A stretch of 64,000 nt of DNA from Malacoraja senta (GCA_038087875.1 CM075985.1:24862001-24926000); one strand, 5' to 3'; numbered from the stretch's first letter, positions 1,171 through 64,000 are shown. Numbers and translations are program-made. Notes: generated from the sequence alone by a model not told the origin.

Positions 1171-1359
1171 GAGGTAGAATTCCTTCTAACTGATGGAAGA
1201 GTGGTAAGGACTGGTAAATCTCGTCAAACCCAGTGCCGAGATAATTCTTATTCATTTCACACGGTCGGACTTTATTTAATCCTCTCATTTTCAAATGGGA
1301 TTGTTGTGATATGGGATAGACACACAAAGTTTTCGATAACATTGGACCCAAGATGGAAA
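1171..1359 (+). CDS. Mucin exon, VWD3 (EVEFLLTDG...YSFHTVGLYLILSFSNGIVVIWDRHTKFSITLDPRWK)
   Basis: tttag|GAG ... AAA|gtaagt; 189 nt, phase 0-0; joins in frame to NKVCGLCG; not in the ORF track. Confidence 0.9.
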
Positions 1360-2208
1360 GTAAGTACTGTTTAGAGATTAGATATTAATGCTTGCATTTT
1401 TTAATGTGGTTAACAATAAATAAATATATCAAGAACTTAATCTCTTGCAGAAATAAATATACATTGCATGCTGCAATAGGTTTCATTCCAGCATTCAGCA
1501 TATTATTTACAATAATCTTAAGTAAATATGTACCATATAAATATATATCAGCATATCTTAATTAAGCATGTTCTCTGTATTATTGTACACTGTTGAAAAT
1601 TGCAGCGAAAATGCGTTTGACTCCATCATAGAAAAACAAAATTAAAAATATAGTTGCTGGAATGATGCTGATGAATGACTATTAGGTGAAATGTTCACTG
1701 TTTTGTCCTCCTCGAATGCTGCCTGACCTGCCGAGTATTTAGTGCATTTTTTATTTTTATTTTCAACTTTCTTGTCGGGCCAGCAGATTTTAAACTTCAA
1801 TGCCGATTTAATACAAAAAGTATTCTGGTAAATTGTTGTATTTTACTTTTGTTTAAAAGCCAAAGCTACAGAATTTAAGAAGCTAAGAAATAGAATTGGT
1901 TGGAGTATAAGAGGTTGTTTGCCAAGAGGCCAAGGAGTTGGGAAATGTGAAACTGTGTTGATTCAAGACCATCATAGCTGGGATAGGAATTTATTATAAG
2001 AAGATATGACAACATGAAATTATATTTTTTTACTCAACTGTTTAGGGCACTAAAATTCCACATCCCTAAGTTGGTCATTGGTGGAGAGTCCAGTCTCTAT
2101 CATTTGCGTTTAATTTTTGGTTTTGTCTCGGATTTACAACTGCAGATTGGGAATAGCCCAATGGAATTTCTCAGTCAAAACATTGTAATAATGTATTTTC
2201 ACTTACAG

Positions 2209-2448
2209 AACAAAGTATGTGGACTGTGTGGAAATTTCAATGACGATGTTGCAGATGATCTAAAAACAAAAGGAAATTCTTTGGTGACCAATACTGTAAA
2301 ATTTGGAAACACCTGGAAATCTTCATTGTCTTGTTCAGATATATTGAATCAAACATTTCCTTGCGATAGAAACCCATACTGTTTAGCATGGGCTCAGAGG
2401 AGATGCAACATAATGAAGGATGTTGTGTTTCAAAATTGCCATAAAAAG
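2209..2448 (+). CDS. Mucin exon, end of VWD3 with CGLCG (NKVCGLCGNFNDD...FQNCHKK)
   Basis: ttacag|AAC ... AAG|gtaagg; lies in ORF 2014..2457. Confidence 0.95.
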
Positions 2449-2541
2449 GTAAGGTAGTTTATTTTGAACAAAATAAATTAAATCAAAGTTGATCTGTATG
2501 CAAAACCTTCTTTCTAACATTATGATCATGCGCTGTATCAG

Positions 2542-2698
2542 GTAGACCCAGTCCCATATTATGATGCTTGTGTTGAAGAAGCTTGTGCCTGTGACATGGA
2601 AGGGAAATATCTGGGCTTCTGCACTGCTGTAGCTGTGTATGCAGAAGCTTGTAATAAAGCTGGAGTTTGTATTAATTGGAGAACACCGGACTTGTGTC
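2542..2698 (+). CDS. Mucin exon, C8-3 domain ([52 protein letters not shown])
   Basis: atcag|GTA ... C|gtaagt; typical C8 cysteine pattern and WRxxxLC. Confidence 0.93.
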
Positions 2699-4570
2699 GT
2701 AAGTATTAAGTTGTAGATATTATTAAACTTATTTGATCAATGCAAGCAATTCTCAAAGAAATTATGTTCTTGAATTTCTTTGAGAATGGTTAATAATGTG
2801 AAGAATAACAAAGATAATTTATTATGTATTATACATCATTTTACTTCAGTGACAGGCTCCCTTCTTTCCTATCATTGTTGTAGCTGGCCCTTTCTCCCCA
2901 AAAACGTGGTGCTAGGTGGATACTTTAGTATGTAAGTGGGAGTCTGAAGGGAAAATAAATACTCCTCCAGTTACCGCAAAAACACGGATCTCTGCTCCAC
3001 TGGGTTCCCCTGGGTACATCAGATAATGTAAACAATGCCTTTAGCTTTGTAGTTAGCAGATGCGAAGGAGCAGCATTACACTTGCATTTGCCCTGGGACA
3101 TTGCTCTGTGACTTGATAACATTACAGCTGTTCAAATGTACTCTGGGATCTGACTGAACAGGTGCAGGGGCATCGTGAGTCTTTAAGCAATCAGACTCAA
3201 ATCAGACTGAATTGCCTGAAGAAGGGTTTTGATCCGAAACGCCACCTATTCCTTTTATCCAGAGATGTTGCCTGATCCGTTGAGTTACTCCAGCATTTTG
3301 TTTCTGTCTTTAAAGAATGGCCACACATGAGCCTAAACTGAAAAGTAGAGGATAAAACAATGTAAAATCCTGGACAGATATCATAGACAAATGACGGAAC
3401 TATGAAATAAAAGAGTATGAACAAAAAGTTTAAAAGTTAGAGTAAATTTTAAATCTCCAACTGAAATTAAAACCTGGTGGAGTTGGATTCAAATAAAAGC
3501 TCATTTCCTGTACCCAACTTTCACTGCACAAGTGCAATTCCTGTTGACTTTGGTGACTATCGAATGGAAAACAACAACCATACCCTTAAGAAGATAAATA
3601 GTAAATGTTTCAGGTTAAAGACCTTTCGGCAAAACTGTTAAGGACACAATAGAAGCTTGTTTAGCTGCAGGGAGCATGGAGGAGGGGAGATGTCTATGAC
3701 TGTGTAAAACCAGGCTGACCATGGCAATAAACTATAAACAAGGTTACATGGAGATATGAGACTGTAGATACTGTAATCTTGAGCATAATACAAAGTACTG
3801 GAAGAACTCAGGGAATGGACAGATGACGTTTCGAGTTTGGACCCTTCCTTCTCTGAAGAAGGGGACCGATCCGAAATGCGGTCTGTCCATTCCTTCCACA
3901 AATGCTACTTGACTCGTTGAGTTCCACCAGCACTTTGTGTTTCATTGTGGACTAGGTTAACTGGTCAATGTGTAAATGGGAGCCGTTAGAGAGTGAAAAC
4001 AGACAAAAGAATGTGGGGGTGTGAAATGCGGATTCGTGAGACAAGCCCAGCGGGTCAAATTCCACATTCCACCACTCCCAGAGATTAAAAGGGCAGTAAA
4101 AAAACACCTGGAGCTAATGTCACAGATGGGTGACTAACATGGACAGAGAAATCACGTTACTTGCAGTTATAAAGTTCAATATTGAGTCCAGGAGCTGCAA
4201 TGGGCCCAGACATAAAATGAGGTACTGTTCCATAAGATTACATTGGACCTCATAACAATGTAGGAGGCAACAAACCAATAAAAAGTCTCCTCTACACTTG
4301 GGTCACCTTAATTCTCCATCCGAATCCCACTCTGACCTATGGATAGACGTGAATGTTGTTCATTGCTATCTGATTCGTTTTTAATAACAACAAGCTGTTA
4401 TTAATGCTCCTACCATTATTCTTGTTATGAAGTTCAGCTAATGAAGCATTTGTCTGATCATTAGTAACAGGAAAGGAATACCGCCAATCATGTGTAACAA
4501 ATCAGAGATTTATAAAACTGGAAACAAATTGCAGGTCATAATGGAGAACTATTTCTGTTTTACATTTCAG

Positions 4571-4696
4571 CTGTGTACTGTGACTATTATAACACTCCCG
4601 GTGAGTGCAGCTGGCACTATCAGCCTTGTGGAACAATAAAAACGCGAACATGCTCCGACCATCACATCGGGAAAAAATATTCTGCAGTTCTTGAAG
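4571..4696 (+). CDS. Mucin exon, TIL3 ([21 protein letters not shown]...AVLEG)
   Basis: tttcag|CT ... G|gttgtg; CDYYN..C.WHY.PCG is a D3 hallmark. Confidence 0.92.
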
Positions 4697-4988: not shown

Positions 4989-5130
4989 GTTGTTATGCAA
5001 GATGCCCTGAGAATACTCCGTATCTGGACGAAAATAAAATGAAATGTGTTAATCTACCTGATTGTACTTGTTATTATAATGGGAAAATATTGCTGCCAGG
5101 CAATAGAACCATGAATGATTGTGAAGAATG
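4989..5130 (+). CDS. Mucin exon, TIL3/E3 (GCYARCPENTPYLDENKMKCV...CTCYYNG)
   Basis: ttcag|GT ... TG|gtatct; lies in ORF 4943..5140. Confidence 0.92.
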
Positions 5131-6208: not shown

Positions 6209-6584
6209 GTGTGTATTATTTTTTACTGTTTTATACCTGTCCTATCCATATACCTTTTTACCTATTTTAACTGGCCCAGAAACAAACAATATGAAAACCT
6301 CGAATCATTCTCGTTGAAATGATTAGAGTCACACCACCTATTTCACACCAGCTCATCCCTGCTTTGCTTTGCTGAGAGGAACTCAAAGACAGGATCCCAA
6401 TGATGCTTTATGAAGTGTTATGGGGACGTGCATCCAAAAGACCATGATTTTTTTACTTTTACATTTAAGATTTTTCAGTTGCCAATTAAGCTTAAAAACT
6501 GAAAATAATCTTCAAAATGCTATTAATTTTATATCATAATCATTGAAAGCTGTGTTATGACCTCTTTATCTTTTTCTTCACCAG

Positions 6585-6653
6585 CATTAGCTACAACCAC
6601 AGAAGTCATTAATTCAACATTAAGTACAACAACAGTTGCAGCAACCACCACAG
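6585..6653 (+). CDS. Thr-rich mini-exon (ALATTTEVINSTLSTTTVAATTT)
   Basis: Pyrimidine tract-cag ... G|gtaatg; 69 nt, phase 1-1; alternative in-frame acceptor at 6590. Confidence 0.78.
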
Positions 6654-12103: not shown

Positions 12104-12184
12104 AAACAACAACAACAACAACAACAACAACTACAACAACAAAAGTACCGCCTACAACTTCATCAACCCGCAACTCCACATCTG
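12104..12184 (+). CDS. Thr-rich mini-exon (ETTT...KVPPTTSSTRNSTS)
   Basis: tttatag|AA ... G|gtaagt; 81 nt, phase 1-1. Confidence 0.8.
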
Positions 12185-12649
12185 GTAAGTCATTGACTGC
12201 TGTATCTTCTTGCACCAGGTTTGATTGCACAACTGAAAGTACAACTTCCACTGATCTTTCTCTTATTTGCCATTTTCTATTGATTTGCTATAGAATTAAT
12301 TGTCTCTGTGGACTTTCTGTTGTAAATTATGTACAACTTACAGAGGATTGTATTTCTGTGAATTTTGAGATAAGACAGTGCAAATTATGAATTGAACCCC
12401 AGTTTAAATATTATTTGGTGATGTACATGATTGGTCAAAATAGGCTCATGATTATGTGCTCCTATAAAGTGAAATTTGGAATGAGTATTCTTGCTGTCAT
12501 TCAAGAGAAGGCGAGAAGTCTTAGGGCTTTAGGAGTAGGTGATGCACACCTTCACAACTATAAACCATGCCAGTACTGAGGAATATCATCAATTGCGAAA
12601 ACAATTGTTTTGCAATTTTATTCTGTAATTTTGGTTATTGAACATTTGA

Positions 12650-13646: not shown

Positions 13647-13693
13647 GGGTGTGCAGTGTAGTAACTGACTGCAATTCCTTCCTTGATTTATAG

Positions 13694-16411: not shown

Positions 16412-16492
16412 TGTCCTTCCATTTACTATACAATTAAAATAGTTGAGTGCCAATTGTCCATTTCCCTTATTGGCCAATAAATGAATCACCAG
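16412..16492 (+). pseudogene. Frameshifted CysD exon fragment (CPSIYYTIKIVECQ...)
   Basis: Nucleotide match to the central part of the array CysD exon, with a 1-nt deletion and no splice sites. Confidence 0.7.
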
Positions 16493-16627
16493 AGGAAATC
16501 GGTCTCGGACAGGCGGTAGAAAACTGGATTTTTATCCCGCCACCCCCCTCAAAGGCGCCAAAGTCACGCACATGGCCAGTGGCAGAACTGCAGCGCAGCT
16601 GAAGGTAAGTATTGTAACATTGCTACA

Positions 16628-17655: not shown

Positions 17656-17712
17656 AAACAACAACAACAAAGGTACCACCCACAACTACATCGACCCGCA
17701 GCTACACAGCTG
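17656..17712 (+). CDS. Array Thr mini-exon copy 1 (ETTTTKVPPTTTSTRSYTA)
   Basis: ttttacag|AA ... G|gtaagt; 57 nt, phase 1-1. Confidence 0.82.
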
Positions 17713-18276
17713 GTAAGTGATTGACGGTTGTTTATCCTTGCACCAAGTTTGTCGGCACAGGTCTCTGGGTGAGCCATTGAGAAAGCAGCAACGTACAACT
17801 TTCACAGCTTTCTCAGATAATGCATTTTCTAAACATTTGCTTTTGAATTAATTGTAGCTGTGGACTTTGTGTTGTAAATTATGGATAATCTTCAGAGGAC
17901 TGTGTTTCGGTGAATTTTCCCATTAGACTGTGCTGATCAAGAAATCAACACCAGTTGATACAATATTCAGTGATGTGCATAATTGGCAGAAATAGGCTCA
18001 TGATTATGTGCCTCCAATATGTGAAATGCAAATGAGTATTCCACAGATTACTTTGATTTAATATATCTTGTCATCCAAAAATATTGTGATTCAAAAGAAG
18101 GCAAAATGTTTCAGGAATTTGGGAGTAGGTGCTGCACATCTTCACAACTATAAACCGGGCCAGTGCTGAGAAATACCATCAAATGAGGAAATATGTATCT
18201 TGCTATTTTATTTTGTACTTTTGGTTAATGAACACTTGAAGGAAGATGAACTGAACCTTTGCTTCTCCTTTTCCAG

Positions 18277-18618
18277 ACTGGAAATGTAATGGTGTCTGGT
18301 CTGCATGGTATAATAACCACAAACCAACTGAATATAGTCCAGGCGATACTGAATTACTGGAATCCATACGGCAAGATCTGTGTCCTTCCAGTTACTGTAC
18401 AATTAAAGAAGTTGAGTGTCAATTTGTCGATTTCCCTTATTGGCCACTAAATGAAACACCAGACAATGTGACCTGTGACCCAGACGTAGGACTGGTCTGC
18501 ACAGTCTCCAATGAGTCTTTGGAGGAAGTCAACATCTGTCTTGACTATCAAATTCGATTTTGCTATGAGCATGTAGCAACAATAACTCCAAGTACAACAT
18601 CAACAACAACAATTTCAG
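18277..18618 (+). CDS. CysD (Mucin2_WxxW) exon copy 1
   Basis: ttccag|AC ... G|gtaaat; 342 nt; DWKCNGVWSAWYN...GDTE...VTCDPDVGLVC...CLDYQIRFCY. Confidence 0.88.
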
Positions 18619-19502
18619 GTAAATATGCCAGTCATGTGCAAGGATACTGTCTTTTATTGAAGGGGCATTTGGAATTTTATTCTGTTTCAGTGAGAGTTCC
18701 AGATGCATTTCCATCTATCACGTTTCCCCTCTAATGAGCTCTGTACAAACTAGCCAGCCCATATTCTCTCCATTAATCCCCACTCTTCATGTGGCCATGC
18801 TACTTCTCATTTTCTTAAAATTCTATCCCTCACCGACGACTTCCTTCTGCTGCGGTCCATCCACTCTCCCTTCCTCCTTCCCTCTGTCTATTTCCAGCAG
18901 TAATTCTCAAGCCACCGATCTAAAGTACAGAGTATCCTTCAACTTTGATACCTTTCCCTATGAGGAACTCTTACTCTGCCCTTCTTTAACTCTCTATCAC
19001 TCCTTAACACCATTGAGAAACAACTTCACCAAAAGAGTTTCAGACCACAACATCATCTACTACCAGCTACAAACTAAACAGGTAACAGTGGGATTACAGT
19101 ACTTCTTGCCCACAATTGTTCTCGAAAGGAACCTGGTTTATTCTTCCGTCTTTGAACAAAATATCACTGATTGTATCTCACATTATTCTTCCTAATTGAT
19201 TGCTTTGATAGGATGGCATCATTGGATTGATGTTGCAATTTAAAGGGCAACATGAAGAAGAAAATCTATTGTTAACATGACAATCTAACTGAATGTGATG
19301 AATGGAAACACAAAAGATGCTGATGGAAGGTTGAGCACTTGCCTCCTTAACATGGGGCAATTGTGAATTGACCAGCAATAAATGCCTGCATTGCTGGTGG
19401 TACCTACACCCTGAAATAAAAAATGAAAAGATGGACCTGATGCCAAGTCATCGAGCAACAGTGTGCATTATAACTTGCTGTGATATCTTTTATGTTTTAC
19501 AG

Positions 19503-19559
19503 AAACAACAACAACAAAGTTACCACCCACAACTACATCGACCCGCAGCTACACAGCTG
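19503..19559 (+). CDS. Array Thr mini-exon copy 2
   Basis: Same splice sites as copy 1; KLPP variant. Confidence 0.82.
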
Positions 19560-20123
19560 GTAAGTGATTGACGGCTGTTTATCCTTGCACCAAGTTTGTC
19601 GGCACAGGTCTCTGGGTGAGCCATTGAGAAAGCAGCAACGTACAACTTTCACAGCTTTCTCAGATAATGCATTTTCTAAACATTTGCTTTTGAATTAATT
19701 GTAGCTGTGGACTTTGTGTTGTAAATTATGGATAATCTTCAGAGGACTGTGTTTCAGTGAATTTTCCCATTAGACTGTGCTGATCAAGAATTCAACACCA
19801 GTTGATACAATATTTAGTGATGTGCATAATTGGCAGAAATAGGCTCATGATTATGTGCCTCCAATATGTGAAATGTAAATGAGTATTCCACAGATTACTT
19901 TGATTTGATATATCTTGTCATCCAAAAATATTGTGATTCAAAAGAAGGCAAAATGTTTCAGGGATTTGGGAGTAGGTGCTGCACATCTTCACAACTATAA
20001 ACCGGGCCAGTGCTGAGAAATACCATCAAATGAGGAAATATGTATCTTGCTATTTTATTTTGTACTTTTGGTTAATGAACACTTGAAGGAAGATGAACTG
20101 AACCTTTGCTTCTCCTTTTCCAG

Positions 20124-20465
20124 ACTGGAAATGTAATGGTGTCTGGTCTGCATGGTATAATAACCACAAACCATCTGAATACAGTCCAGGCGATACTGAA
20201 TTACTGGAATCCATACGGCAAGATCTGTGTCCTTCCAGTTACTGTACAATTAAAGAAGTTGAGTGTCAATTTGTCGATTTCCCTTATTGGCCACTAAATG
20301 AAACATCAGACAATGTGACCTGTGACCCAGACGTAGGACTGGTCTGCACAGTCTCCAATGAGTCTTTGGAGGAAGTCAACATCTGTCTTGACTATCAAAT
20401 TCGATTTTGCTATGAGCATGTAGCAACAATAACTCCAAGTACAACATCAACAACAACAATTTCAG
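20124..20465 (+). CDS. CysD exon copy 2
   Basis: Intact AG/GT and open 342 nt frame. Confidence 0.88.
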
Positions 20466-21349
20466 GTAAATATGCCAGTCATGTGCAAGGATACTGTCTT
20501 TTATTGAAGGGGCATTTGGAATTTTATTCTGTTTCAGTGAGAGTTCCAGATGCATTTCCATCTATCACGTTTCCCCTCTAATGAGCTCTGTACAAACTAG
20601 CCAGCCCATATTCTCTCCATTAATCCCCACTCTTCATGTGGCCATGCTACTTCTCATTTTCTTAAAATTCTATCCCTCACCGACGACTTCCTTCTGCTGC
20701 GGTCCATCCACTCTCCCTTCCTCCTTCCCTCTGTCTATTTCCAGCAGTAATTCTCAAGCCACCGATCTAAAGTACAGAGTATCCTTCAACTTTGATACCT
20801 TTCCCTATGAGGAACTCTTACTCTGCCCTTCTTTAACTCTCTATCACTCCTTAACACCATTGAGAAACAACTTCACCAAAAGAGTTTCAGACCACAACAT
20901 CATCTACTACCAGCTACAAACTAAACAGGTAACAGTGGGATTACAGTACTTCTTGCCCACAATTGTTCTCGAAAGGAACCTGGTTTATTCTTCCGTCTTT
21001 GAACAAAATATCACTGATTGTATCTCACATTATTCTTCCTAATTGATTGCTTTGATAGGATGGCATCATTGGATTGATGTTGCAATTTAAAGGGCAACAT
21101 GAAGAAGAAAATCTATTGTTAACATGACAATCTAACTGAATGTGATGAATGGAAACACAAAAGATGCTGATGGAAGGTTGAGCACTTGCCTCCTTAACAT
21201 GGGGCAATTGTGAATTGACCAGCAATAAATGCCTGCATTGCTGGTGGTACCTACACCCTGAAATAAAAAATGAAAAGATGGACCTGATGCCAAGTCATCG
21301 AGCAACAGTGTGCATTATAACTTGCTGTGATATCTTTTATGTTTTACAG

Positions 21350-21406
21350 AAACAACAACAACAAAGTTACCACCCACAACTACATCGACCCGCAGCTACA
21401 CAGCTG
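21350..21406 (+). CDS. Array Thr mini-exon copy 3
   Basis: Same splice sites as copy 1. Confidence 0.82.
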
Positions 21407-21970
21407 GTAAGTGATTGACGGCTGTTTATCCTTGCACCAAGTTTGTCGGCACAGGTCTCTGGGTGAGCCATTGAGAAAGCAGCAACGTACAACTTTCACA
21501 GCTTTCTCAGATAATGCATTTTCTAAACATTTGCTTTTGAATTAATTGTAGCTGTGGACTTTGTGTTGTAAATTATGGATAATCTTCAGAGGACTGTGTT
21601 TCAGTGAATTTTCCCATTAGACTGTGCTGATCAAGAATTCAACACCAGTTGATACAATATTTAGTGATGTGCATAATTGGCAGAAATAGGCTCATGATTA
21701 TGTGCCTCCAATATGTGAAATGTAAATGAGTATTCCACAGATTACTTTGATTTGATATATCTTGTCATCCAAAAATATTGTGATTCAAAAGAAGGCAAAA
21801 TGTTTCAGGGATTTGGGAGTAGGTGCTGCACATCTTCACAACTATAAACCGGGCCAGTGCTGAGAAATACCATCAAATGAGGAAATATGTATCTTGCTAT
21901 TTTATTTTGTACTTTTGGTTAATGAACACTTGAAGGAAGATGAACTGAACCTTTGCTTCTCCTTTTCCAG

Positions 21971-22312
21971 ACTGGAAATGTAATGGTGTCTGGTCTGCAT
22001 GGTATAATAACCACAAACCATCTGAATACAGTCCAGGCGATACTGAATTACTGGAATCCATACGGCAAGATCTGTGTCCTTCCAGTTACTGTACAATTAA
22101 AGAAGTTGAGTGTCAATTTGTCGATTTCCCTTATTGGCCACTAAATGAAACACCAGACAATGTGACCTGTGACCCAGACGTAGGACTGGTCTGCACAGTC
22201 TCCAATGAGTCTTTGGAGGAAGTCAACATCTGTCTTGACTATCAAATTCGATTTTGCTATGAGCATGTAGCAACAATAACTCCAAGTACAACATCAACAA
22301 CAACAATTTCAG
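21971..22312 (+). CDS. CysD exon copy 3
   Basis: Intact AG/GT and open 342 nt frame. Confidence 0.88.
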
Positions 22313-23197: not shown

Positions 23198-23254
23198 AAA
23201 CAACAACATCAAAGGTACCACCCACAACTACATCGACCCGCAGCTACACAGCTG
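23198..23254 (+). CDS. Array Thr mini-exon copy 4
   Basis: Same splice sites as copy 1. Confidence 0.82.
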
Positions 23255-23818
23255 GTAAGTGATTGACAGTTGTTTATCCTTGCACCAAGTTTGTCGGCAC
23301 AGGTCTCTGGGTGAGCCATTGAGAAAGCAGCAACGTACAACTTTCACAGCTTTCTCAGATAATGCATTTTCTAAACATTTGCTTTTGAATTAATTGTAGC
23401 TGTGGACTTTGTGTTGTAAATTATGGATAATCTTCAGAGGACTGTGTTTCGGTGAATTTTCCCATTAGACTGTGCTGATCAAGAATTCAACACCAGTTGA
23501 TATAATATTTAGTGATGTGCATAATTGGCAGAAATAGGCTCATGATTATGTGCCTCCAATATGTGAAATGTAAATGAGTATTCCACAGATTATTTTGATT
23601 TGATATATCTTGTCATCCAAAAATATTGTGATTCAAAAGAAGGCAAAATGTTTCAGGGATTTGGGAGTAGGTGCTGCACATCTTCACAACTATAAACCGG
23701 GCCAGTGCTGAGAAATACCATCAAATGAGGAAATATGTATCTTGCTATTTTATTTTGTACTTTTGGTTAATGAACACTTGAAGGAAGATGAACTGAACCT
23801 TTGCTTCTCCTTTTCCAG

Positions 23819-44200: not shown

Positions 44201-44683
44201 AAATAATATCAACAACAACGCCAACAATCACAACAACAACAACAACAACACCAACAACAACAACACCAACAACACCAACAACAACAACAACCATGACAAC
44301 AATGCCAACAACGCCAACAACAACAACAACAACAACAACAATGCCAACAACCATGACAACAATGCCAACAACAACAATGACGCCAACAACAATGCCAACA
44401 ACAACCACAACAACAACAACAACAACAACACCAACAACAACAACAAAAACAATGACGCCAACAACCATGACAACAATGCCAACAACGCCAACAACAACAA
44501 CAATGACGCCAACAACAATGCCAACAACGCCAACAACAACAACAACAATGACGCCAACAACCATGACAACAACAACAATGACGCCAACAACCATGACAAC
44601 AACAACAATGCCAACAATCACAACAACAACGACACCAACAATCACAACAACAACAATGCCAACAACCACCAGCTCTACATCTA
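44201..44683 (+). CDS. Thr/Pro/Met-rich PTS exon
   Basis: ctgtag|AA ... A|gtaagt; 483 nt, phase 1-1; frame of ORF 44176..44691. Confidence 0.88.
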
Positions 44684-45143: not shown

Positions 45144-46684
45144 TCCAGCAATTTGCATCCTTTTGTGTAAACCAGTGTCTGCAGTTCCTTGTTTCTACCG
45201 TTTGCACGTAATTTTTAAAAAAACATTCAAAATGTCATCATCTTGGCTTTCTTTTCAGCATTGAGGTGTGATTGTGTTAGTTGACTGGGATAAGGTATCT
45301 CTCAAAGTTATTTGGAATTGGCATCAAGTTAAATATTCACCACATCCCGATTCTCAATCTCAATGGTGACCACTTAGCAAGAAGTGTAGCAATTCAGCTT
45401 CTGTTCACAATGAATAGAGACAGGACCCCCTTCCCTTAGATTCTCCTGCTATCCAAAAATCTAGTTACCTCAACCTTGGATGTACATAATGGATCTGAAA
45501 CACTGGATCCAGCCCACACTTCATGGTCATCGTCTGCACTAACTCTTCAGCTGCAATAAATCTTTGCAGCTGCATGTCTCTGCCATGGCCAGTCAATTAA
45601 ATAGAGGAGGCTGTGAGCTATAACTATGTCTCGGGCATTACGATGTAAGCCCTTGTTCCTAAGGGTGTCAAAGGTTATGGGGTGAAGGCAGAAGGATGGA
45701 GTTGAGAGGGAAAGATATATCAGCCATGATTGAATAGCGGAGTAGACTTAATGGGCCAAATGGCCTAATTCTGCGCCTATGACTTATGAACATTAACTTT
45801 TTCAGGGATATACTTAGTGTCCTTCTGACAGCTAATGCAGTAAAGTGACCTTTTCAAAAATTTAGAAGCCATGGAAAAACAAAATGAAAACAAATGAAGA
45901 TAAAGACATTGGAAAATAATAAATTCCATTAAAAGTAGACGTATGCATTACCTCATCAGTATTTATCTGCAGACCTGCTGGGAAGCCTCAGAAACCAACG
46001 AGATGTGAGAGCAATCACTGAAATACTGAAGTTGGGATAAGCCATGTTCTTTGTTTGATCAGCCATGATCATATTGAAGATGAAGCAGGCTCAGATTCAG
46101 TACCATGTTCTGTGTTTTCTCTCTATTTTCCTTGAGCTCTAGAGTTATTCATAATTGTTCTAACCTCCTTCTTGATTGTGTTAACTGCCTTCTGTGATAG
46201 AGAATTCCATACTGATTAAGAAATTTCTCTTTACTTCAGTCCCAATTGTCCGACATAGCCTCTAGCTGTGACTCCAGGTTGTGGACATTCCCTGCATTGG
46301 GGACACCTTTAATGCTCTGTAAAACAATGATTTTACACATTTCAGTTCCTGCTCAGTCTTCTAACCTCTAGTAAATTGAACCTGGGGTGGGATCGGGCTG
46401 GGATGGGACCTTCTCAACATCAAGCAATGAAGGGACCAGTCCAATTTGGTTTTGGGTTTTGATTCTAATGTAGTTTATAAGCAACCAGCATATAATGGTA
46501 ATTCAAAGGCAGGCAGCTGGGGAGGTTGCATTAGGCTTGAATGGATTAAAGTCAACTAGCATCTATAAAAAAACAATTTGTTTAATCAACTCAAGATGTA
46601 TCCATGAAGTTTTTAGTTGAAGTTTCATCAAAACTTTTGACTTTGCTTTCTTACCACTAATTGATTATTTTGTGTTTTATTTAG

Positions 46685-46741
46685 AAAGACATACAACAGT
46701 GACAACTGCTACAAGTTCTCCTATTCACAGCACCACCACTG
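46685..46741 (+). CDS. Thr mini-exon (RHTTVTTATSSPIHSTTT)
   Basis: tttag|AA ... G|gtaaca; 57 nt. Confidence 0.72.
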
Positions 46742-47608: not shown

Positions 47609-48003
47609 AACTGTTTTGCAATGGAGAATGGTCATCCTGGTTTAATACCAATACGCCATCTATTCAGGATAAAGGCGACTATGAACTGTTGGAAGAATTA
47701 CCCCCAAAGCTGTGTCCCTATAAAATAAGTGACATTAATTGTGAAGCTGTCAAGTTCCCACAGCAACCAATAAATAAAACACAGGACATTGTTACTTGTG
47801 ATAGAACAAAAGGGCTGATCTGCAATTACACTGACCAGAGTCCCAAGGATCGCCTCATGTGTCTGGATTATAGAATTAGGGTGTGCTGTGAGCGAAAGCA
47901 GAGTACATCCACAATAATTCCCACAATCTATGAGCCCACACACAAGAAGGTCACATACAAACCACCGGAATCATGTTTTTGCAATTCAAGCCCACCAAGG
48001 AAG
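47609..48003 (+). CDS. Divergent CysD plus linker into the C-terminal region (LFCNGEWSSWFN...IRVCC...CFCNSSPPRK)
   Basis: tcacag|AA ... AAG|gtaagg; phase 1-0; ORF 47563..48075. Confidence 0.9.
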
Positions 48004-50343: not shown

Positions 50344-50515
50344 TGTTTGGAATCATGGCAGGCCAACTGCACAATTGTTACCTGTCTGAAAGGAGATACG
50401 TTTAAAATTGAGCCCGTTGTCTGTCCAGAGTTTGGTAAACCAAAATGTAGTAATAATGTGGAGCCTGTGAAAGTTCGCACCGAAAACGGATGTTGTGAGC
50501 AGTGGGAATGTGACT
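50344..50515 (+). CDS. VWC-like pre-D4 exon (CLESWQANCTIVTC...GCCEQWECD)
   Basis: ttctag|TGT ... T|gttagt; open frame with mucin Cys pattern. Confidence 0.88.
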
Positions 50516-50784: not shown

Positions 50785-51017
50785 GTGAATGTGAAGTATG
50801 GGGAGATCCTCACTATAACTCATTTGGCGGTCTGTCATATGACTTCTTTGATAACTGCACATATACGCTAGTGGAAGAAAAAATCCCAAAGTACAATTTC
50901 TCAGTTCTGGTGGATAATTATTTTTGCATCCCCTTCATAAAGAACTCTTGCCCAAAAGGCCTAATTATCTCTTACAATGGAAACGTTGTGCATATTTCAA
51001 CTGGGGGAGAATATGTG
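50785..51017 (+). CDS. VWD4 exon 1 with GDPH (CECEVWGDPHYNSFGG...)
   Basis: ttctag|GT ... GTG|gtgagt. Confidence 0.92.
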
Positions 51018-51447
51018 GTGAGTTCCTTTACATTGTTGCCAATATTCTAAGTTAGAAACATGCAGTCCATTTGGCTTCTGAGGCTTGATCTGCATGTAAA
51101 ACACCAAGACTGATCTAACTCCATTCAACCTACAATTGTCCTACTTCACTCAATACTTCTAGTTAACAAACATCTATTAACTTTGTATTAAGAGTTGTTA
51201 ACTAGAAGTTTTCACATCAATTGCCAATTGCAAGAAATTTCAAACTATTACCACATTGTGTGTGCAGACGGGTTTGCTACATGCATCCTATAAAGTTTGG
51301 TTTGATTTCTCACCCAGCCAGACTTTCTGTAGAGTGTATATAATCTTGCCTCATAATTTAGTCCAAGTATCAATTTGATAAATTCACAATGTGCTGCCTC
51401 CAAAGCCAATATGTATTTCTAAATCTAAGGTGCATAGAATTGCTTAA

Positions 51448-51766
51448 AGGGCCTGTCCCACTTACGTGACTTTTTTGGCAACTGCCGGCACCCGTCGTAG
51501 GTAGGCAAAAATTTTAAACATGTTGAATATTCAGCGGCGACCGGCAAGACGCTACGACTCTTTAGGTGACTAGGAGACTACTCACCACTATACAGGCGAC
51601 ATGTCGCAGGGTGAAGCCTGTATGGTCGTCAGTAGTTCACCAAAGAGTCGTACCTTGTTCTGGTCTCTGCTGGATTTTCAACATGTTCAAAATTTTCGGC
51701 GACCTGTAACAACCTATGACGGGTGCCGGCAGTCGCCGAAAAAGTCGCGTAAATGGGACAGGCCCT
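51448..51766. mobile_element. PIF/Harbinger-like MITE
   Basis: Same TIR; long inverted arms; TAA duplication. Confidence 0.85.
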
Positions 51767-52667
51767 TAAGTGTTGCTGGGATTTGTGTCTAACCAAGGCT
51801 TTGTTCTCTTCTTCAATTCATTTCATAGGATGTGGGCAGCACATGGAGTGATCTTTAGTTTAAATGTGGCAAAACTGGCAAAGTTCACTCCAGTTCTTGC
51901 TCACTTATGATTAATCTGGTCCCCAGATGATTCAAATGATGAGGTGAAAGTGAGTAAGAATCTACTTGATTCTGACACCTTATAGGTTTTCCACCATTTG
52001 CAAGGTATAGGTCAGGACAGCGAAGGGCTACTCTGTTGCCCTGATTAATTTTGATACAATAATAATCAAAAACAACGGGACATAGTATCCCAATGCATTG
52101 CTCTAAATATTCATATCATCAAGCAATGTGTACCATTTGCAAATGTAAGGCAGCAACTTGCCAAACACTCTGTGAAAACCATCCCAAACCTGTGCCCAAC
52201 ATGTCCCCACGGAGCCTTCGACACATTAACTGCAGCAGCCCAATACGGTCATTGCCACCTTCTTGAAAGTAGTTAAGTCTGGACATTAAATGCTGGGATC
52301 ACCAACTGCACCCACATCCAATATAAGAACTTTAAAAATGAAGTAAAATTGTGTTGCCCCGATATCATCATGAGGGTCTTGATTTATTTTTTCATTTCAC
52401 TGTCTGATAATATGGCAAAGACCTTGTCTTACAAAATAATTCGTGACATGACATGTTAAATTATGTTCTGCACATATTCATTTTTGAACACATTAACTGT
52501 AGAGCTGTTTGACAAATTATTGGAACAATTTATTTTATTGCCAGAAACTACTTTATGACACATATTAATTCTATAATGTGCATCAAATATAGACATGATC
52601 AAAACACCGAACGACATGTTTTTTGTATCTTGTGTTAATTTTCACAATTATATTTTTCCTTTCACAG

Positions 52668-52851
52668 TTAACAGTCAATGGAATAAACGTGAAACTTCCC
52701 TATAATTCAAAAGGATTTAGCATTACAAAATTAGGCTCCAGCACACGTATTTTTATTCCTGACATTCGAACAGTAATTAATGCTTTCCGTAATGCCTTTA
52801 AGATCAGAGTACCTGAAAAATACTTCTTTAACAACACTCAAGGCCAATGCG
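52668..52851 (+). CDS. VWD4 exon 2 (LTVNG...FFNNTQGQC)
   Basis: tcacag|TTA ... G|gtatga; ORF 52623..52874. Confidence 0.9.
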
Positions 52852-52960
52852 GTATGAATTCTAAGACTCCATAAAGTTGTATAAATTCGTACATTCCAAA
52901 ATCTTACTGCTAATTTGTGCCTTAATTTAATTCATAACATAATATCTCTTCCTTTTTTAG

Positions 52961-53165
52961 GATCCTGCTCCGCAGACCAATGCATTAGAAAAAATGGCAA
53001 AGTTGAGCCTTCTGACTGTTGTCACAAAACTGCATTTGATTGGAAAGTTGATGATCTCAGTAAACCTTACTGCGATTCAGCTCCCACTAATGTTCCCTGT
53101 ATTCCCCCTCCTCCTCCACCAACATGCCCCAGTACGAAAACAATCTGTGATATCATTCAAGGAGA
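52961..53165 (+). CDS. VWD4 end and Pro-rich linker (GSCSADQC...CDIIQGE)
   Basis: ttttag|GA ... GA|gtaagt; ORF 52915..53169. Confidence 0.9.
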
Positions 53166-54663: not shown

Positions 54664-54839
54664 ACCATTTAGAGAATGCAGAAGCAAGATCGACCTTAAG
54701 CGGTTTGTCAAGAGTTGTGTCTTTGACCACTGTGTTCTCAATTCCACTGCTGACTGTAGTAGCTTGGAAGCTGCTGCCTTGGCCTGTGCAAGTGTGGGTG
54801 TGTGTGTGGACTGGAGGAAATCCACAAATGGAAAATGCA
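54664..54839 (+). CDS. C8-4 exon (PFRECR...CVFDHC...GVCVDWRKSTNGKC)
   Basis: tttag|A ... A|gtaagt; ORF 54608..54862. Confidence 0.92.
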
Positions 54840-55813: not shown

Positions 55814-55883
55814 ATTATACCTGTGATGAAGGTTTAGTATACAAGCCATGTGCAAGGAATAACAGTGACTATTGTGAACACAA
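55814..55883 (+). CDS. TIL4 exon 1 (YTCDEGLVYKPCARNNSDYCEH)
   Basis: aag|AT ... AA|gtaagt; phase 1-2. Confidence 0.85.
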
Positions 55884-56019
55884 GTAAGTATAATGCTTGC
55901 ATGTTCCAACTAAAAATTCATATCCATGTCAGTTATCTGGTCATGAACTATAATGTTTTTAAATTAAACCCTTGTCTTTGATTGTAAAATTAAATCAAAG
56001 CCTCTGTCTCTTCCTGCAG

Positions 56020-56126
56020 TGTGGTGAAAGCTGGCGAGACGTTCAACCCAGCTGAGGAAGGCTGCTTTTGTCCAGATGGATTGGTCTTTTCTGAAGACAG
56101 ATCCAAATGTGTTCCTTTTTGTGAAA
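56020..56126 (+). CDS. TIL4 exon 2 (...EEGCFCPDGLVFSEDRSKCVPFCE)
   Basis: ctgcag|T ... A|gtaggt; EGCFCP motif. Confidence 0.9.
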
Positions 56127-59065: not shown

Positions 59066-59097
59066 GTTGCCATGACTATTTAGGACGGCCAAGAAAG
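59066..59097 (+). CDS. Micro-exon (SCHDYLGRPRK)
   Basis: ttgcag|GT ... AAG|gtgagt; 32 nt, phase 1-0 fits both neighbours. Confidence 0.8.
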
Positions 59098-60597: not shown

Positions 60598-60708
60598 AAT
60601 GGTGAGACATGGGAAGATCCTACAAATCCGTGCATTTCATATTCATGTACTCCGTATGGAGTTTTAATCAGAAATCAGTCTTGCATTCAGGATGAAACCT
60701 GCCCTGAG
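60598..60708 (+). CDS. VWC-like exon (NGETWEDPTNPCISYSC...TCPE)
   Basis: tcacag|AAT ... GAG|gtatgt. Confidence 0.88.
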
Positions 60709-61614
60709 GTATGTGAGAATCAGTATTGATTACAAGCATGTCAATCTCATCAAGGAAAATGAATAAATCATTCTATAAGACCTTCTGAAGTACAGAATCT
60801 TATAAAATACTTTTCAGATCTGATGGGATTGATTTTGTGTGTCTTTTATGGTCTTGTGATCAGAGTAGATTAAAATGAAATTTCATATTTCAATTACGGA
60901 AACTATTACTACTGTTCATTTATTCTTTTATTTCAATTGTTTATCCTCTGTGAAGCAATCATACTACCTTCTTTTATGTCCATTTAAACGTAAGCAAGCA
61001 AATGAAACATGCCTGGAATGGGATTTTTGTGCAGGTGCAGTTTATCTCAATCCCAAAATTGCATTCCTCGAGACTACACTATTTTGCAGCTTTCCTATTA
61101 TATTCAAGTATATTTAATGGAAATGTTAGGTGTTTATGAACACATCATGTATACAGTGCAGGAAGTGGTAAATTAATTATGAATGCTATCTTTTAACAAT
61201 TGCCTTAAAAAGTTGATTTTGTGTACCTGCATAGATTTTCGCTATACAAATATTTCAGAATAGAATGAAAATAATTGTAATTAAAAGTTGCTTATGATAT
61301 TTCAGCTCTATCTTAATCTTGGATATGTTTTAATTTTTATTCTGCACTCTGAAATACTTAAACCAATTGTTAAAAATTATCTTTTCTCCTTCCCGATTTA
61401 CTGTTTAAGAATTCATTAATCTTAATGGGTGCTTGACCTCTAATGATATCACTATTCTGGTAGCTAGGAATCCATCTGAACTGATGATTAACAACATGTA
61501 TGTTAGTCAAGGAGGTTTGATCTATAGAGATTACGGGGTCTTCAATTAATTGAAAGCTGTATATATAAAGATCAACATTTACCAAATTAACTGTTAATAT
61601 TTTGTTATTTTCAG

Positions 61615-61666
61615 TCTCAAAGAACCTATGCCAATCGTTGCTGTTTTACATGCAATCAAATACAAG
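61615..61666 (+). CDS. Small exon (SQRTYANRCCFTCNQIQ)
   Basis: tttcag|TCT ... G|gtaccc; CCxxC end of a VWC-like module. Confidence 0.8.
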
Positions 61667-62494
61667 GTACCCTTTTAATACCTGACATAAACATTGATTA
61701 TTTGTTGAAAATACTGTCTTGTAAAAATGACACTGTTAAATGACTACATAATCACTGACTAACTAGAGAAGGACCAACACTTCTATTGATTGGGAGGAAA
61801 TTCTCAGAAATAATTCAAATGTGCTTTGGTAAAAACTTAACAGGAATTACAAGAACCATTTGCAAAAACCCACGTGAAGCTCCTGATGTACATTTTTTAA
61901 CGTTTTTTTTTCTTATCAAATTCAAACCTGTTCTCAGCTTTTGTTAAAATTGTATATTTGTTCAGTTCCATTTTCACTGCTGATAAAATCTACTTTCTGG
62001 GCATGGGCTCATTAGATCTCTCTTCCCTTGCATGTTATTGAAGTGGAGGAATTTCATATCAGACATCCACACAACACATTTCATATGGTTATTGGACAGC
62101 AGTGAAATTGGCACCTGAAACCTACAGGGAACATTACACGAGTCTGCAATAATTTTCTGCCCTTCACTTCACATTTTGTACCAATGTATTTTTGCTACTG
62201 AATTGGTAATTTACTGATCGTAAAATTATGATTTCATCTTGGGCTTTTTGAGACATATATGCTTTTGATTTTGGTTATTTTGTGACATACTGTATTTCAG
62301 TGCCTCCTTATTGTATGAAATGCAATATCATACCTCTGGATATACTGTTAATTTACAGAATAAACTACTTTATAACAACACATGTAATGATGCTTGAAAA
62401 TTATGAATTCAAAGACAAATAAACGTATACACATTTGTCGAGATGCCCAAACCCACACTTCTAACATGGTCTGATTTACTTTTGCCTTCCTAAG

Positions 62495-62597
62495 GTCAAT
62501 GCACAATCAATAAATTCAATGAAACAATAACAAGAGGATTTTGCACAGCAACCTTTATGGCAAACCAATGTCAAGGATATTGTCCATCAGCAAGTCG
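62495..62597 (+). CDS. Cystine-knot (CTCK) exon 1 (QCTINKFNETITRGFC...NQCQGYCPSAS)
   Basis: cctaag|GT ... CG|gtaagt; CxGxC motif. Confidence 0.87.
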
Positions 62598-63955
62598 GTA
62601 AGTGAGATTTGTTCTGTTTTAATGTATGCAAACAAACAGTAGTATAGAGCATTAGAAAGCTCTACATGATGAGCATTCTGAGTTCAAATGTAACCTGGGG
62701 GTTCAATTTCTCTTAATGAAATTTAAAATGGATCCATCTATGATCATTGGCTTTATATCCTGCTAAATTGTCACATTTCCTTGTTGTTTTTGACTGCAAC
62801 CAGATCTAATGTGTTTCCAATTCTCATGGGCATTTGAATTTAAATGATAGTTTAACATTTTCAGAGTATAGACCAATAGTCTCTGGGTAGTTCTGTGCCC
62901 CATCTATTCTGTATGATCTCAAACTATCTTGGGGAGCACGTCCACCCTTCCTTCCTACCCTTAGCCCTGATACCAAATAATCCTGAAATTGTGATAGTTG
63001 AATGGATAAAAAGCAGTAGCAATTTGTTAGTCTGGTGTCATTGCCCTATATAACTGACACTTTTCTAGCTATGTTGAAGACAAGCCTGTTAATTAGTTTT
63101 TGGCATGTAGTAGTAGGTATTGCTTGGTCCCCAGTATATAATTCAGATGTTCAGAATTCCGCCCAGCTGGTTCTAATTTAGTTTTGTTTACTGAGGTACA
63201 GTGAAAAGCTTTTTTGTTGCATCCTATCCAATCATTGAGAAGACTATACTTGATTACAATTGAGCTGTCCACGGTGTACAGATACAGGATCAAGGGTATA
63301 TTATTTGGTGCAAGATGAAGTCCAATTAAAAATAGTTCAAAGGCTTCCAGAAATTCCCATTGGGAAGATTGTAATAAGTAAGTGTGAATTCAGTTTGGAG
63401 GATCGCAGTAGTGCAGGCAACCCCCACTGCTGACCACGGGAAACAGTCATGTTCCTATTTTCATTCCCACCCCTGCCATTCTACACTCTGACCGCAACTT
63501 CCTGCTGCTTTACACTTGCCAATTGGTTCAATCTCTGGACTGCTGCATTGACAGGAACATAGAGGTAGCAGCTGAAGGGATGGAAATAATTTGCATTTTA
63601 TTAAAGTAAGAAACAGGAATACTAAAATAGTGTATTTAAACCGTTCCATAATGGGTCTGCAACAGTAATGACTTGCATGGCTTCTTTTAGACTAAAAATG
63701 CTCAAGGCAAATCATGGCCTTTAAAGATCTAAAATTTGTAGGGCTGGAGAAGACTACACGTATACAGGGTGGAGAGTGAACATGCAGGGATCAGAAAACA
63801 AAGATGACAAAAATTAAGTCATAGTCAGACCAGAAGGCAATACTGGGTAATAATGTAGTATTCAGCCATAACAACTGTACAAGAATAGGCTAACGTAACA
63901 TTGTAATAATAAGTTAACAAACTTGTCCTACATCTTTATGCAAATATTTTTCAAG

Positions 63956-64000
63956 GTATGACTTCAAAAGAAATCGCATGGACAATTTTTGCCAGTGCTG
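63956..64000 (+). CDS. CTCK exon 2, cut by the window end (YDFKRNRMDNFCQCC)
   Basis: ttcaag|G; phase 2 fits; CxCC motif. Confidence 0.8.

What the first reader, a model, noticed from the sequence alone, without database searches (positions are those of the whole stretch)
1171..64000. A MUC19-signature mucin that keeps CysD domains and a full D4 assembly: possible ancestral MUC19 architecture
Seen: the C8-3 motif [23 protein letters not shown], followed by PVYCDYYNxPGECxWHYxPCG and CYAxCPxxxPYLDENxMKCV. The C-terminus reads DPTNPCISYSC...RTYxxxCCFTC...YDF...NFCQCC. Also seen are nine CysD exons and VWD4-C8-TIL4 with GDPH. From my recollection, these D3 and C-terminal motifs match MUC19/porcine submaxillary apomucin, whereas MUC2/MUC5 have GGDCECFC. 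Mammalian MUC19 is described as lacking CysD and D4. Inference: a MUC19-lineage gene that kept the MUC2/5 architecture. The two modules flanking D4 here (SWQANC...CCEQWEC and DPTNPCISYSC) resemble modules I recall as adjacent in mammalian MUC19, suggesting later loss of D4 as a block. The D4 block spans a phase-1 donor at 50515 to a phase-1 donor at 56126, so it could be removed in frame.
Basis: partly seen in the sequence, partly recalled or inferred. Interest (0 to 1): 0.75.

Follow-up and report, generated by a model that had tools for sequence, protein, structure and literature searches.

The report
Skate MUC19-family mucin with CysD, D4
This window holds the back two-thirds of an ordinary, expressed skate mucus-protein gene that belongs to the MUC19 family yet still carries the CysD and fourth D domains that mammalian MUC19 has lost; that fits an ancestral layout, but much of it is already known or annotated.

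Summary
All quoted motifs, nine intact CysD exons, a complete D4 assembly with GDPH, one VWC and the start of a cystine knot lie on the + strand with canonical splice sites. RNA contigs from related skates join the D4 exons exactly as modelled.

The MUC19 assignment is supported.
- The D3 piece sits in a clade with mammalian, frog, bichir, paddlefish and teleost MUC19 (support 100/99).
- Grouping it with MUC2/MUC5 is rejected (AU p 1.7e-8).
- It shares the MUC19-specific loss of the cysteines equivalent to MUC2 C1088 and C1090.
- D4 and CysD trees agree with vertical inheritance.

Novelty is modest.
- A fourth VWD in fish MUC19/spiggin is published (Lang 2016).
- RefSeq already models orthologues under misleading names such as "mucin-5AC-like" and "mucin-2-like".
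- This scan already noted CysD-bearing MUC19-type genes elsewhere in this genome.

The first VWC of mammalian MUC19 matches the VWC downstream of D4 in bony-fish MUC19, not the module upstream of D4. Mammals therefore lost the pre-D4 module together with D4. The skate itself lost most of that first VWC, leaving a hybrid made of a 32-nt micro-exon plus the body of the second VWC.

Synteny could not be tested.

The parts
1171..1359 (+). VWD3 exon. The gene starts upstream of the window.
   Evidence: AG/GT borders, phase 0-0. tblastn to Pristis P0013 gives 84% identity.
2209..2448 (+). Exon covering the end of VWD3 and the start of C8-3 (80 aa).
   Evidence: Matches D3 of solved MUC5AC, MUC5B and MUC2 at about 70 bits. 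Used as the query.
2542..2698 (+). C8-3 exon with the MUC19 signature [13 protein letters not shown], which lacks the cysteines equivalent to MUC2 C1088 and C1090.
   Evidence: Alignment. Javitt 2019 statement.
4571..4696 (+). TIL3 exon ([21 protein letters not shown]). It keeps the cysteine equivalent to MUC2 C1130.
   Evidence: Position counted from the MUC2 alignment.
4989..5130 (+). Exon covering the end of TIL3 and E3 (CYARCPENTPYLDENKMKCV...NDCEE).
6545..6649 (+). First PTS exon (CVMTSLSFSSPALATTTEV...). Borders are approximate.
   Evidence: tblastn to Rhinoraja P0212 gives 80% identity.
12106..12252 (+). Thr-rich PTS exon. Borders are approximate.
17658..29699 (+). Seven CysD exons, each preceded by a PTS micro-exon of about 20 aa. 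Copies 1-6 lie in a 1.85-kb tandem unit; for example, CysD exon 1 is 18277-18618, 114 codons, phase 1-1. CysD cores start at 18285, 20132, 21979, 23827, 25677, 27520 and 29349.
   Evidence: Pfam Mucin2_WxxW at 58 bits for copy 1.
31624..32095 (+). Two PTS micro-exons, at 31624-31677 and 32021-32095.
   Evidence: tblastn to P0212 gives 80-89% identity.
33993..34335 (+). CysD exon 8.
44203..44679 (+). Largest PTS exon (Thr/Pro/Met-rich, about 160 aa), encoded by a CAA/ACA-type repeat.
46684..46740 (+). Small PTS exon.
47609..48003 (+). Terminal CysD exon 9. It also encodes the start of the pre-D4 module (CFCNSSPPRK).
   Evidence: Pfam Mucin2_WxxW at 68 bits. AG/GT borders. Orthologous to the last CysD of other elasmobranch paralogues.
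50344..50515 (+). Pre-D4 VWC-like module (CLESWQANC...CCEQWECD), with a phase-1 donor.
   Evidence: Junction to 50785 seen in RNA contigs. Part of the MUC2 D4 assembly in 7QCU.
50785..53165 (+). VWD4 in three exons (50785-51017, 52668-52851, 52961-53165), including WGDPHY.
   Evidence: Pfam VWD. Splice junctions in RNA contigs.
54664..54839 (+). C8-4 exon.
   Evidence: Pfam C8 at 49.7 bits. Junction 53165>54664 seen in RNA.
55814..56126 (+). TIL4 in two exons (55814-55883, 56020-56126). The last donor is phase 1.
59066..59097 (+). 32-nt micro-exon (S)CHDYLGRPRK. It is the first exon of VWC1, of the same length and phase as in Fundulus MUC19.
   Evidence: Present in the Rhinoraja protein P0212.
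60598..61666 (+). Body of the VWC2-type domain in two exons: 60598-60708 (NGETWEDPTNPCISYSC...) and 61615-61666 (SQRTYANRCCFTCNQIQ).
62495..64000 (+). First half of the cystine knot in two exons: 62495-62597, and 63956-64000, which is cut by the window end.
   Evidence: The orthologue's CTCK matches VWF CTCK 4NT5.
16412..16500 (+). Decayed, frameshifted remnant of a tenth CysD exon. It is not part of the coding model.

Best explanation
The window holds the 3' two-thirds of an intact gel-forming mucin gene of a skate. It runs from the middle of VWD3 to the first half of the cystine knot. It is the orthologue of Rhinoraja longicauda 'mucin-5AC-like' (P0212) and one of at least five old elasmobranch paralogues that are co-orthologues of vertebrate MUC19.

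The architecture seen in the window is: D3 (partial), then PTS exons and nine CysD, then a pre-D4 VWC-like module, VWD4-C8-4-TIL4, one VWC and the CTCK.

Inferred from the solved MUC2, MUC5 and VWF homologues, it should work like any polymeric mucin:
- tail-to-tail dimers form through the cystine knot;
- head-to-head disulfide linking occurs through D3, here with only the C1130-type cysteine because the C1088/C1090 pair is missing, as in all MUC19;
- the Thr-rich exons are O-glycosylated;
- the CysD beads act as non-covalent cross-links;
- the D4 assembly carries a GDPH autocleavage motif.

Evolutionary reading: D4, and probably one CysD next to it, were present in MUC19 of the jawed-vertebrate ancestor. 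Mammals lost CysD, the pre-D4 module and D4. The skate lineage expanded CysD, and it lost the main exon of VWC1 and the micro-exon of VWC2, leaving a hybrid VWC.
For: - Exon model with canonical splice sites and an open frame. Spliced RNA contigs confirm the D4 junctions.
- The Rhinoraja locus is collinear at 86-88% nucleotide identity, introns included. P0212 is 95% identical in D3 and D4.
- D3 ML tree: MUC19 clade at 100/99, containing the window. AU test rejects a union with MUC2/5, p 1.7e-8.
- D3 identity is about 60% to mammalian MUC19 and 43-47% to MUC2/5.
- The shared MEGKYLGFC signature replaces GGDCECFC. Javitt 2019 note that MUC19 lacks C1088 and C1090.
- D4 tree: elasmobranch plus bichir and teleost MUC19 D4 at 99/95, with lamprey as sister at 100/99.
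- CysD tree: MUC19-type CysDs stand apart from the MUC2/5 CysDs, which group at 98/90; the array copies nest among the terminal copies.
- Bichir 'mucin-19-like' has 4 VWD and 1 CysD. Teleost MUC19 has D4.
- The orthologue's C-terminus aligns end to end with the solved MUC2 D4 assembly 7QCU, at 260 bits.
- VWC homologies and exon borders.
Against: - Synteny with LRRK2/CNTN1 was not tested; no neighbouring gene lies within 10 kb in four loci.
- The tail tree is weak: 83/81, and AU p 0.42 only fails to reject.
- Within the MUC19 clade, elasmobranchs sit as sister to ray-finned fishes at only 92/74, not as sister to all bony vertebrates.
- CysD monophyly for the MUC19 type is only 87/80, on 103 columns.
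- The RNA evidence comes from Logan contigs of related species (about 3-4% divergent), not from the window's own individual.
- The function of every domain is inferred from homologues.
Confidence: 0.85

Rival explanations
1. It is a MUC5AC or MUC2 orthologue, as the RefSeq names of its orthologues say. The CysD plus D4 architecture would then be simply that of those families.
For: RefSeq calls the orthologues 'mucin-5AC-like' and 'mucin-2-like'. The architecture matches MUC2/5, and the C-terminus aligns with the MUC2 structure 7QCU.
Against: - D3 identity is 43-47% to MUC2/5 against about 60% to MUC19.
- The D3 tree gives 100/99 for the MUC19 clade, and the AU test rejects the union with MUC2/5, p 1.7e-8.
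- D4 does not group with MUC2 or MUC5 D4.
- GGDCECFC is absent.
- N-terminal fragments of the same shark genes are named 'mucin-19-like', which suggests the names follow which part of the protein was modelled.
Confidence: 0.03
2. It is a chimera: a MUC19-type head (D1-D3) joined by recombination or exon shuffling to a MUC2/5-type middle and tail (CysD, D4).
For: Mammalian MUC19 lacks CysD and D4. In the literature CysD is credited to MUC2/5.
Against: - The D4 tree places this D4 with the D4 of bichir and teleost MUC19 at 99/95, matching the D3 tree.
- MUC19-type CysDs are separate from MUC2/5 CysDs.
- The bichir has a CysD in the same position, just before the pre-D4 module.
- The tail scores higher against mammalian MUC19 than against MUC2/5.
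Confidence: 0.05
3. The elasmobranch genes are a separate old family, for example an ohnologue that bony vertebrates lost. On this reading it is sister to MUC19 rather than co-orthologous, so the architecture says little about ancestral MUC19.
For: The branching order inside the MUC19 clade is only moderately supported, at 92/74. There are at least five paralogue lineages in sharks and rays. Synteny is untested.
Against: - The elasmobranch rows nest inside the clade, next to ray-finned MUC19, and do not lie outside tetrapod plus ray-finned MUC19.
- They share the derived cysteine loss.
- Lang 2016 classify chimaera genes as Muc19 paralogues, alongside separate Muc2, Muc5 and Muc6 genes.
- Bichir and teleost MUC19 themselves have D4, so the inference of an ancestral D4 does not depend on the elasmobranchs.
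Confidence: 0.07

Closest known systems
Mammalian MUC19 (includes porcine submaxillary mucin)
   Same: - Same D3 clade, at 100/99, with about 60% identity in D3.
- Same C8-3 signature lacking the MUC2 C1088/C1090 cysteines.
- VWC2-type DP(T/S)NPCISY(S/T)C module followed by a cystine knot.
   Different: - The mammalian protein has no CysD, no pre-D4 module and no VWD4-C8-4-TIL4.
- It has two complete VWCs before the knot, whereas the skate has one hybrid VWC.
Teleost MUC19/spiggin and bichir 'mucin-19-like'
   Same: - Same D3 and D4 clades.
- They keep the pre-D4 module and D4 with GDPH.
- The bichir also has one CysD just upstream.
- The 32-nt first exon of VWC1 is shared with Fundulus.
   Different: - The teleost models examined have no CysD.
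- Teleosts keep both VWC1 and VWC2, and the bichir keeps VWC1 only.
- None has a CysD array.
MUC2, MUC5AC and MUC5B
   Same: - Overall architecture: D3, then PTS with interspersed CysD, then a D4 assembly with GDPH, VWC and CTCK.
- The orthologue's C-terminus aligns along the solved MUC2 D4 assembly.
   Different: - Different family by the D3, D4 and CysD trees.
- GGDCECFC is replaced.
- Only one VWC follows D4.
Rhinoraja longicauda 'mucin-5AC-like' (P0212) and other elasmobranch RefSeq models
   Same: - Orthologous locus, collinear through the introns at 86-88% nucleotide identity.
- 95% protein identity in D3 and D4.
- Also has nine CysD and four VWD.
   Different: - The internal CysD copies are only 68-72% identical between the two species but nearly identical within each, indicating concerted evolution or independent amplification.
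- The PTS exon is shorter here.

Membership tests
MUC19 family (vertebrate gel-forming mucin) | The D3 assembly groups with bona fide MUC19 in a phylogeny, apart from MUC2, MUC5 and MUC6. | tested here: met
   MUC19 clade at 100/99, containing the window. The alternative with MUC2/5 is rejected, AU p 1.7e-8.
MUC19 family (vertebrate gel-forming mucin) | C8-3 lacks the cysteines equivalent to MUC2 C1088 and C1090 (Javitt 2019). | tested here: met
   [13 protein letters not shown] replaces C.CD.GGDCECFC, and is shared with mammalian, frog, teleost and bichir MUC19. Paper statement.
MUC19 family (vertebrate gel-forming mucin) | Location beside LRRK2/CNTN1, in conserved synteny with spiggin and Muc19. 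| not testable with these tools
   The window ends inside the gene. No neighbouring gene lies within 10 kb in the skate, sawfish or Fundulus loci. No scan notes mention LRRK2 or CNTN1.
MUC19 family (vertebrate gel-forming mucin) | Mammalian-type architecture: no fourth VWD and no CysD. | tested here: not met
   Nine CysD and a full D4 are present. This feature defines mammalian MUC19 only: teleost and bichir MUC19 have D4 (Lang 2016).
MUC19 family (vertebrate gel-forming mucin) | C-terminal VWC plus cystine knot of MUC19 type. | tested here: inconclusive
   The tail scores about 75 bits against mammalian MUC19 and about 50-59 bits against MUC2/5. The tree is weak, at 83/81 with AU p 0.42. The knot is cut by the window end.
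Gel-forming (polymeric) mucin | VWD-C8-TIL assemblies, PTS region and a C-terminal cystine knot. | tested here: met
   Pfam VWD, C8 and Mucin2_WxxW on window exons; 4 VWD, 4 C8 and TIL on the orthologue. Thr-rich exons are present. The CTCK matches VWF 4NT5.
MUC2/MUC5 families | D3 and D4 group with MUC2 or MUC5; GGDCECFC in C8-3. | tested here: not met

The most novel reading that the evidence does not exclude
CysD and the whole D4 assembly were already part of MUC19 in the last common ancestor of jawed vertebrates. On this reading all four gel-forming mucin families descend from one MUC2/5-like architecture. The short tails of mammalian MUC19 and of MUC6 would then be independent secondary losses. 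The MUC19 C-terminus would have been remodelled lineage by lineage through loss of whole, frame-compatible exons:
- skate: VWC1 main exon plus VWC2 micro-exon;
- bichir: VWC2;
- mammals: pre-D4 module plus D4.
Probability: 0.6. Interest if true: 0.4.

Novelty: new member of a known kind. Interest (0 to 1): 0.33.

Why it matters
- It tidies the history of the mucus-gel proteins. The simple mammalian MUC19 layout is derived, not primitive, and CysD is not a private feature of MUC2/MUC5.
- It shows that the automatic names of the elasmobranch genes ("mucin-2-like", "mucin-5AC-like", "mucin-6-like") are misleading for comparative work on fish skin and gut mucus.
- The shared loss of the C1088-type cysteine across 450 million years suggests that MUC19-type mucins link their heads through a single disulfide. 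That could be tested with a recombinant D3.
- None of this changes how gel-forming mucins are thought to work.

Tried and rejected
- I first took an open frame near 6170 (CSVCKNGKVICRG) for the exon after TIL3. The Rhinoraja orthologue shows that the next exon is the PTS exon at about 6545.
- I tried to join exon 56020-56126 directly to the frame holding ACHVILPSWFCSQNGETW. Only phase 0 and phase 2 acceptors exist there. The answer was the micro-exon at 59066-59097, with an acceptor at 60598.
- I searched the 56127-60597 introns for remnants of the VWC1 main exon with bichir, teleost, lamprey and mammalian queries. Only noise came back.
- Synteny: four locus look-ups gave no informative neighbour within 10 kb, and scan notes hold nothing on LRRK2 or CNTN1.
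- Two word-indexed protein searches with C-terminal regions reached only close relatives. So MUC19 C-termini of amphibians, reptiles, lungfish and coelacanth were not obtained, and the loss of D4 could not be dated.
- Ranking by whole-protein score was misleading, because many-VWD FCGBP and zonadhesin proteins dominate. I re-ranked by single-domain alignment.
- No supplement text was held for Lang 2016.

Full report
**What is in the window.**

The 64-kb window (GC 0.40, no N) carries on its + strand a long, exon-poor stretch of a vertebrate gel-forming mucin gene. I built an exon model using the nearest database proteins as guides.

The D3 part has five exons: 1171-1359, 2209-2448, 2542-2698, 4571-4696 and 4989-5130. 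Together they read 284 aa without a stop.

The C-terminal part has thirteen exons:
- 47609-48003
- 50344-50515
- 50785-51017
- 52668-52851
- 52961-53165
- 54664-54839
- 55814-55883
- 56020-56126
- 59066-59097
- 60598-60708
- 61615-61666
- 62495-62597
- 63956-64000

All thirteen have AG/GT borders and read 627 aa without a stop.

Between these two parts lie Thr-rich PTS exons and nine CysD exons. Six of the CysD exons sit in a 1.85-kb tandem unit made of a 114-codon CysD exon and a PTS micro-exon of about 20 aa.

Pfam confirms Mucin2_WxxW, VWD and C8 on single window exons.

The gene is cut at both ends of the window. It begins inside VWD3 and ends inside the cystine knot, at ...NFCQC.

**Checks on the model.**

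Logan contigs from RNA-type runs of related skates differ from the window by about 3-4%. They are spliced exactly at 50515>50785, 51016>52667, 52850>52960 and 53165>54664. With 2-3 divergent letters at the joint, they also join 54839>55816 and 55880>56020. One 2.4-kb contig carries all of these joints, at word depths of 116-830. The D4 exons are therefore part of a real, well-represented mRNA in close relatives.

The six exons between them add up to 975 nt.

Continuing the frame after 56126 needs a 32-nt micro-exon at 59066-59097, encoding (S)CHDYLGRPRK. I found it by pattern search. It is present in the Rhinoraja protein.

**Whose gene it is.**

A profile-free search with the 80-aa exon 2209-2448 returned 150 cluster representatives. 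Re-ranked by alignment to the 284-aa D3 piece, the identities are as follows:

| Protein | Identity to window D3 |
|---|---|
| Rhinoraja longicauda 'mucin-5AC-like' (P0212) | 95% |
| Pristis 'mucin-2-like' | 88% |
| sharks | 75-83% |

The Rhinoraja locus (L001) is collinear with the window through introns at 86-88% nucleotide identity. The window is therefore the orthologous locus of another skate.

**Family.**

Below the elasmobranchs there is a clear step in D3 identity:
- About 58-62% to bichir and paddlefish 'mucin-19-like' and to mammalian mucin-19 from rat, horse, pika, kangaroo rat, desman and marmot (names).
- Only 43-47% to tetrapod MUC2, MUC5AC and MUC5B (names).

A careful ML tree of 67 D3 pieces gives a MUC19 clade with support 100/99 and stem length 0.46. 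It contains frog and mammalian MUC19, ray-finned MUC19 including four teleosts, and 21 elasmobranch rows including the window. MUC2, MUC5 and MUC6 are separate, and lamprey mucins sit just outside the clade. Forcing the elasmobranch rows together with MUC2/5 costs 92.7 log-likelihood units (AU p 1.7e-8).

The whole MUC19 clade has [12 protein letters not shown] where MUC2, MUC5, MUC6, lamprey and amphioxus have GGDCECFC. This is the difference that Javitt et al. 2019 describe: MUC19 lacks the cysteines equivalent to MUC2 C1088 and C1090. The C1130-type cysteine (GECSWHY) is kept.

**Are D4 and CysD native to this lineage?**

Yes, on the evidence available.
- In a 42-row D4 tree, the elasmobranch D4s group with the D4s of bichir and teleost MUC19 (99/95). 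Lamprey is sister (100/99). They are apart from MUC2-D4 and MUC5-D4. D4 thus tells the same story as D3, which argues against a chimera.
- GDPH is conserved in nearly all of these D4s.
- In a CysD tree (103 columns, so weak), MUC19-type CysDs from elasmobranchs and bichir stand apart from the MUC2/5 CysDs, which group at 98/90. The amplified internal copies nest among the terminal copies.
- The terminal CysD, just upstream of the pre-D4 module, is found in most elasmobranch paralogues and in the bichir.
- Eleven mammalian MUC19 models have neither D4 nor CysD. Teleost MUC19 has D4 but no CysD.
- The orthologue's C-terminus aligns along the whole solved MUC2 D4 assembly (7QCU, 260 bits), and its knot aligns with the VWF CTCK.

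**The C-terminal tail.**

The 114-aa tail scores about 75 bits against mammalian MUC19 tails and about 50-59 bits against MUC2/5. In the tail tree it groups with the mammalian MUC19 tails at only 83/81. Monophyly of all MUC19-type tails is merely not rejected (AU p 0.42). This is consistent with MUC19 but not strong.

Mammalian MUC19 does end with VWC1-VWC2-knot. However, VWC1 (CHGPLGEKKSPGEEW...) matches best the VWC that follows D4:
- in bichir, 46% and 76 bits;
- in Fundulus MUC19, 43% and 62 bits;
- likewise in lamprey, MUC2 and MUC5.

It matches the pre-D4 module at only 33-36 bits.

Reading the sequences gives these C-terminal layouts:

| Lineage | C-terminal layout |
|---|---|
| Teleost MUC19 | pre-D4 module, D4, VWC1, VWC2, knot |
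| Bichir | CysD, pre-D4 module, D4, VWC1, knot |
| Mammals | VWC1, VWC2, knot |
| Skate (this window) | CysD, pre-D4 module, D4, one VWC, knot |

Mammals therefore lost the pre-D4 module together with D4, upstream of VWC1.

The skate's single VWC is a hybrid. In the Fundulus locus, both VWC1 and VWC2 are built from a micro-exon plus a main exon, with the border just before (P/L)G(E/D)xW. The VWC1 micro-exon there is 32 nt and encodes CKGPLGEPKF. The skate micro-exon is also 32 nt, has the same phases and is of VWC1 type (CHDYLGRPRK). The exon that follows it is of VWC2 type (NGETWEDPTNPCISYSC). The simplest reading is loss of the VWC1 main exon and the VWC2 micro-exon. No remnant is detectable in the intron. 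This step is inference.

**Novelty.**

- Lang et al. [quoted passage not shown] - I found no paper in the searchable library that describes CysD in MUC19-type mucins or treats elasmobranch mucin architecture.
- The proteins are already modelled in RefSeq for many sharks and rays. Their names follow whichever part of the protein was modelled.
- Notes of this same scan already report MUC19-type genes with CysD on other DNA of this genome (s1-175009). They also report a paralogue 316 kb downstream said to lack D4 (s1-175134). I did not check those.

The finding is therefore a sound classification with a modest new point (CysD and the exon-level history of the tail). It is not a new kind of gene.

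**Untested.**

- Synteny.
- The N-terminal third of the gene and the end of the knot, both outside the window.
- Expression in the window's own species.
- The date of the D4 loss within lobe-finned vertebrates.
- All biochemical properties.

Noticed in passing
window 16412-16500: A frameshifted remnant of a CysD exon (CPSIYYTIKIVECQLS in one frame, FPYWPINESPEEI in another) lies upstream of the array. It looks like a decayed tenth copy.
   Followed up: partly
window 18277-27853 (CysD copies 1-6): These copies read CPSSYCTIKEVEC...IRFCYEH, where copies 7-8 and the Rhinoraja copies read CPSIY(Y/H)TI.K.EC...IRFCCE. One cysteine seems to have moved between two positions. This is the subject of another note of this scan (s1-210400).
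   Followed up: partly
window 17473-29665 versus L001 72935-74427: Internal CysD units are nearly identical within each skate species but only 68-72% identical in protein (about 83% in DNA) between species, while the flanking domains are 95% identical. This points to concerted evolution or independent amplification of the array.
   Followed up: partly
window 57695-58432: An open frame of 246 aa inside the intron (LNFLKLNSSKTEFLLIGSK...) looks like the tail of a retroelement reverse transcriptase. It was not scanned against any library.
   Followed up: no
window 53846-54239 and 55028-55421: These intron stretches have very high summed word depth (up to about 150,000) in all four runs laid, with many contigs and loose ends. 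They are probably an abundant interspersed repeat that is transcribed or present in many copies.
   Followed up: no
window 41480-41720: An 84-bp tandem repeat, 2.9 copies at 91% identity, lies in the large intron before the main PTS exon.
   Followed up: no
Proteins P0011, P0014, P0017, P0021, P0190, P0212 and others: RefSeq names for members of one elasmobranch MUC19-type clade vary between mucin-2-like, mucin-5AC-like, mucin-6-like, mucin-19-like and uncharacterized. N-terminal fragments tend to be called mucin-19-like, and full models with CysD and D4 tend to be called mucin-2-like or mucin-5AC-like.
   Followed up: yes
D3 tree: At least five elasmobranch MUC19-type paralogue lineages each contain both sharks and rays, so the family expanded before the shark-ray split. 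Lamprey mucins named MUC5A or mucin-2-like sit next to the MUC19 clade, not with MUC2/5.
   Followed up: partly
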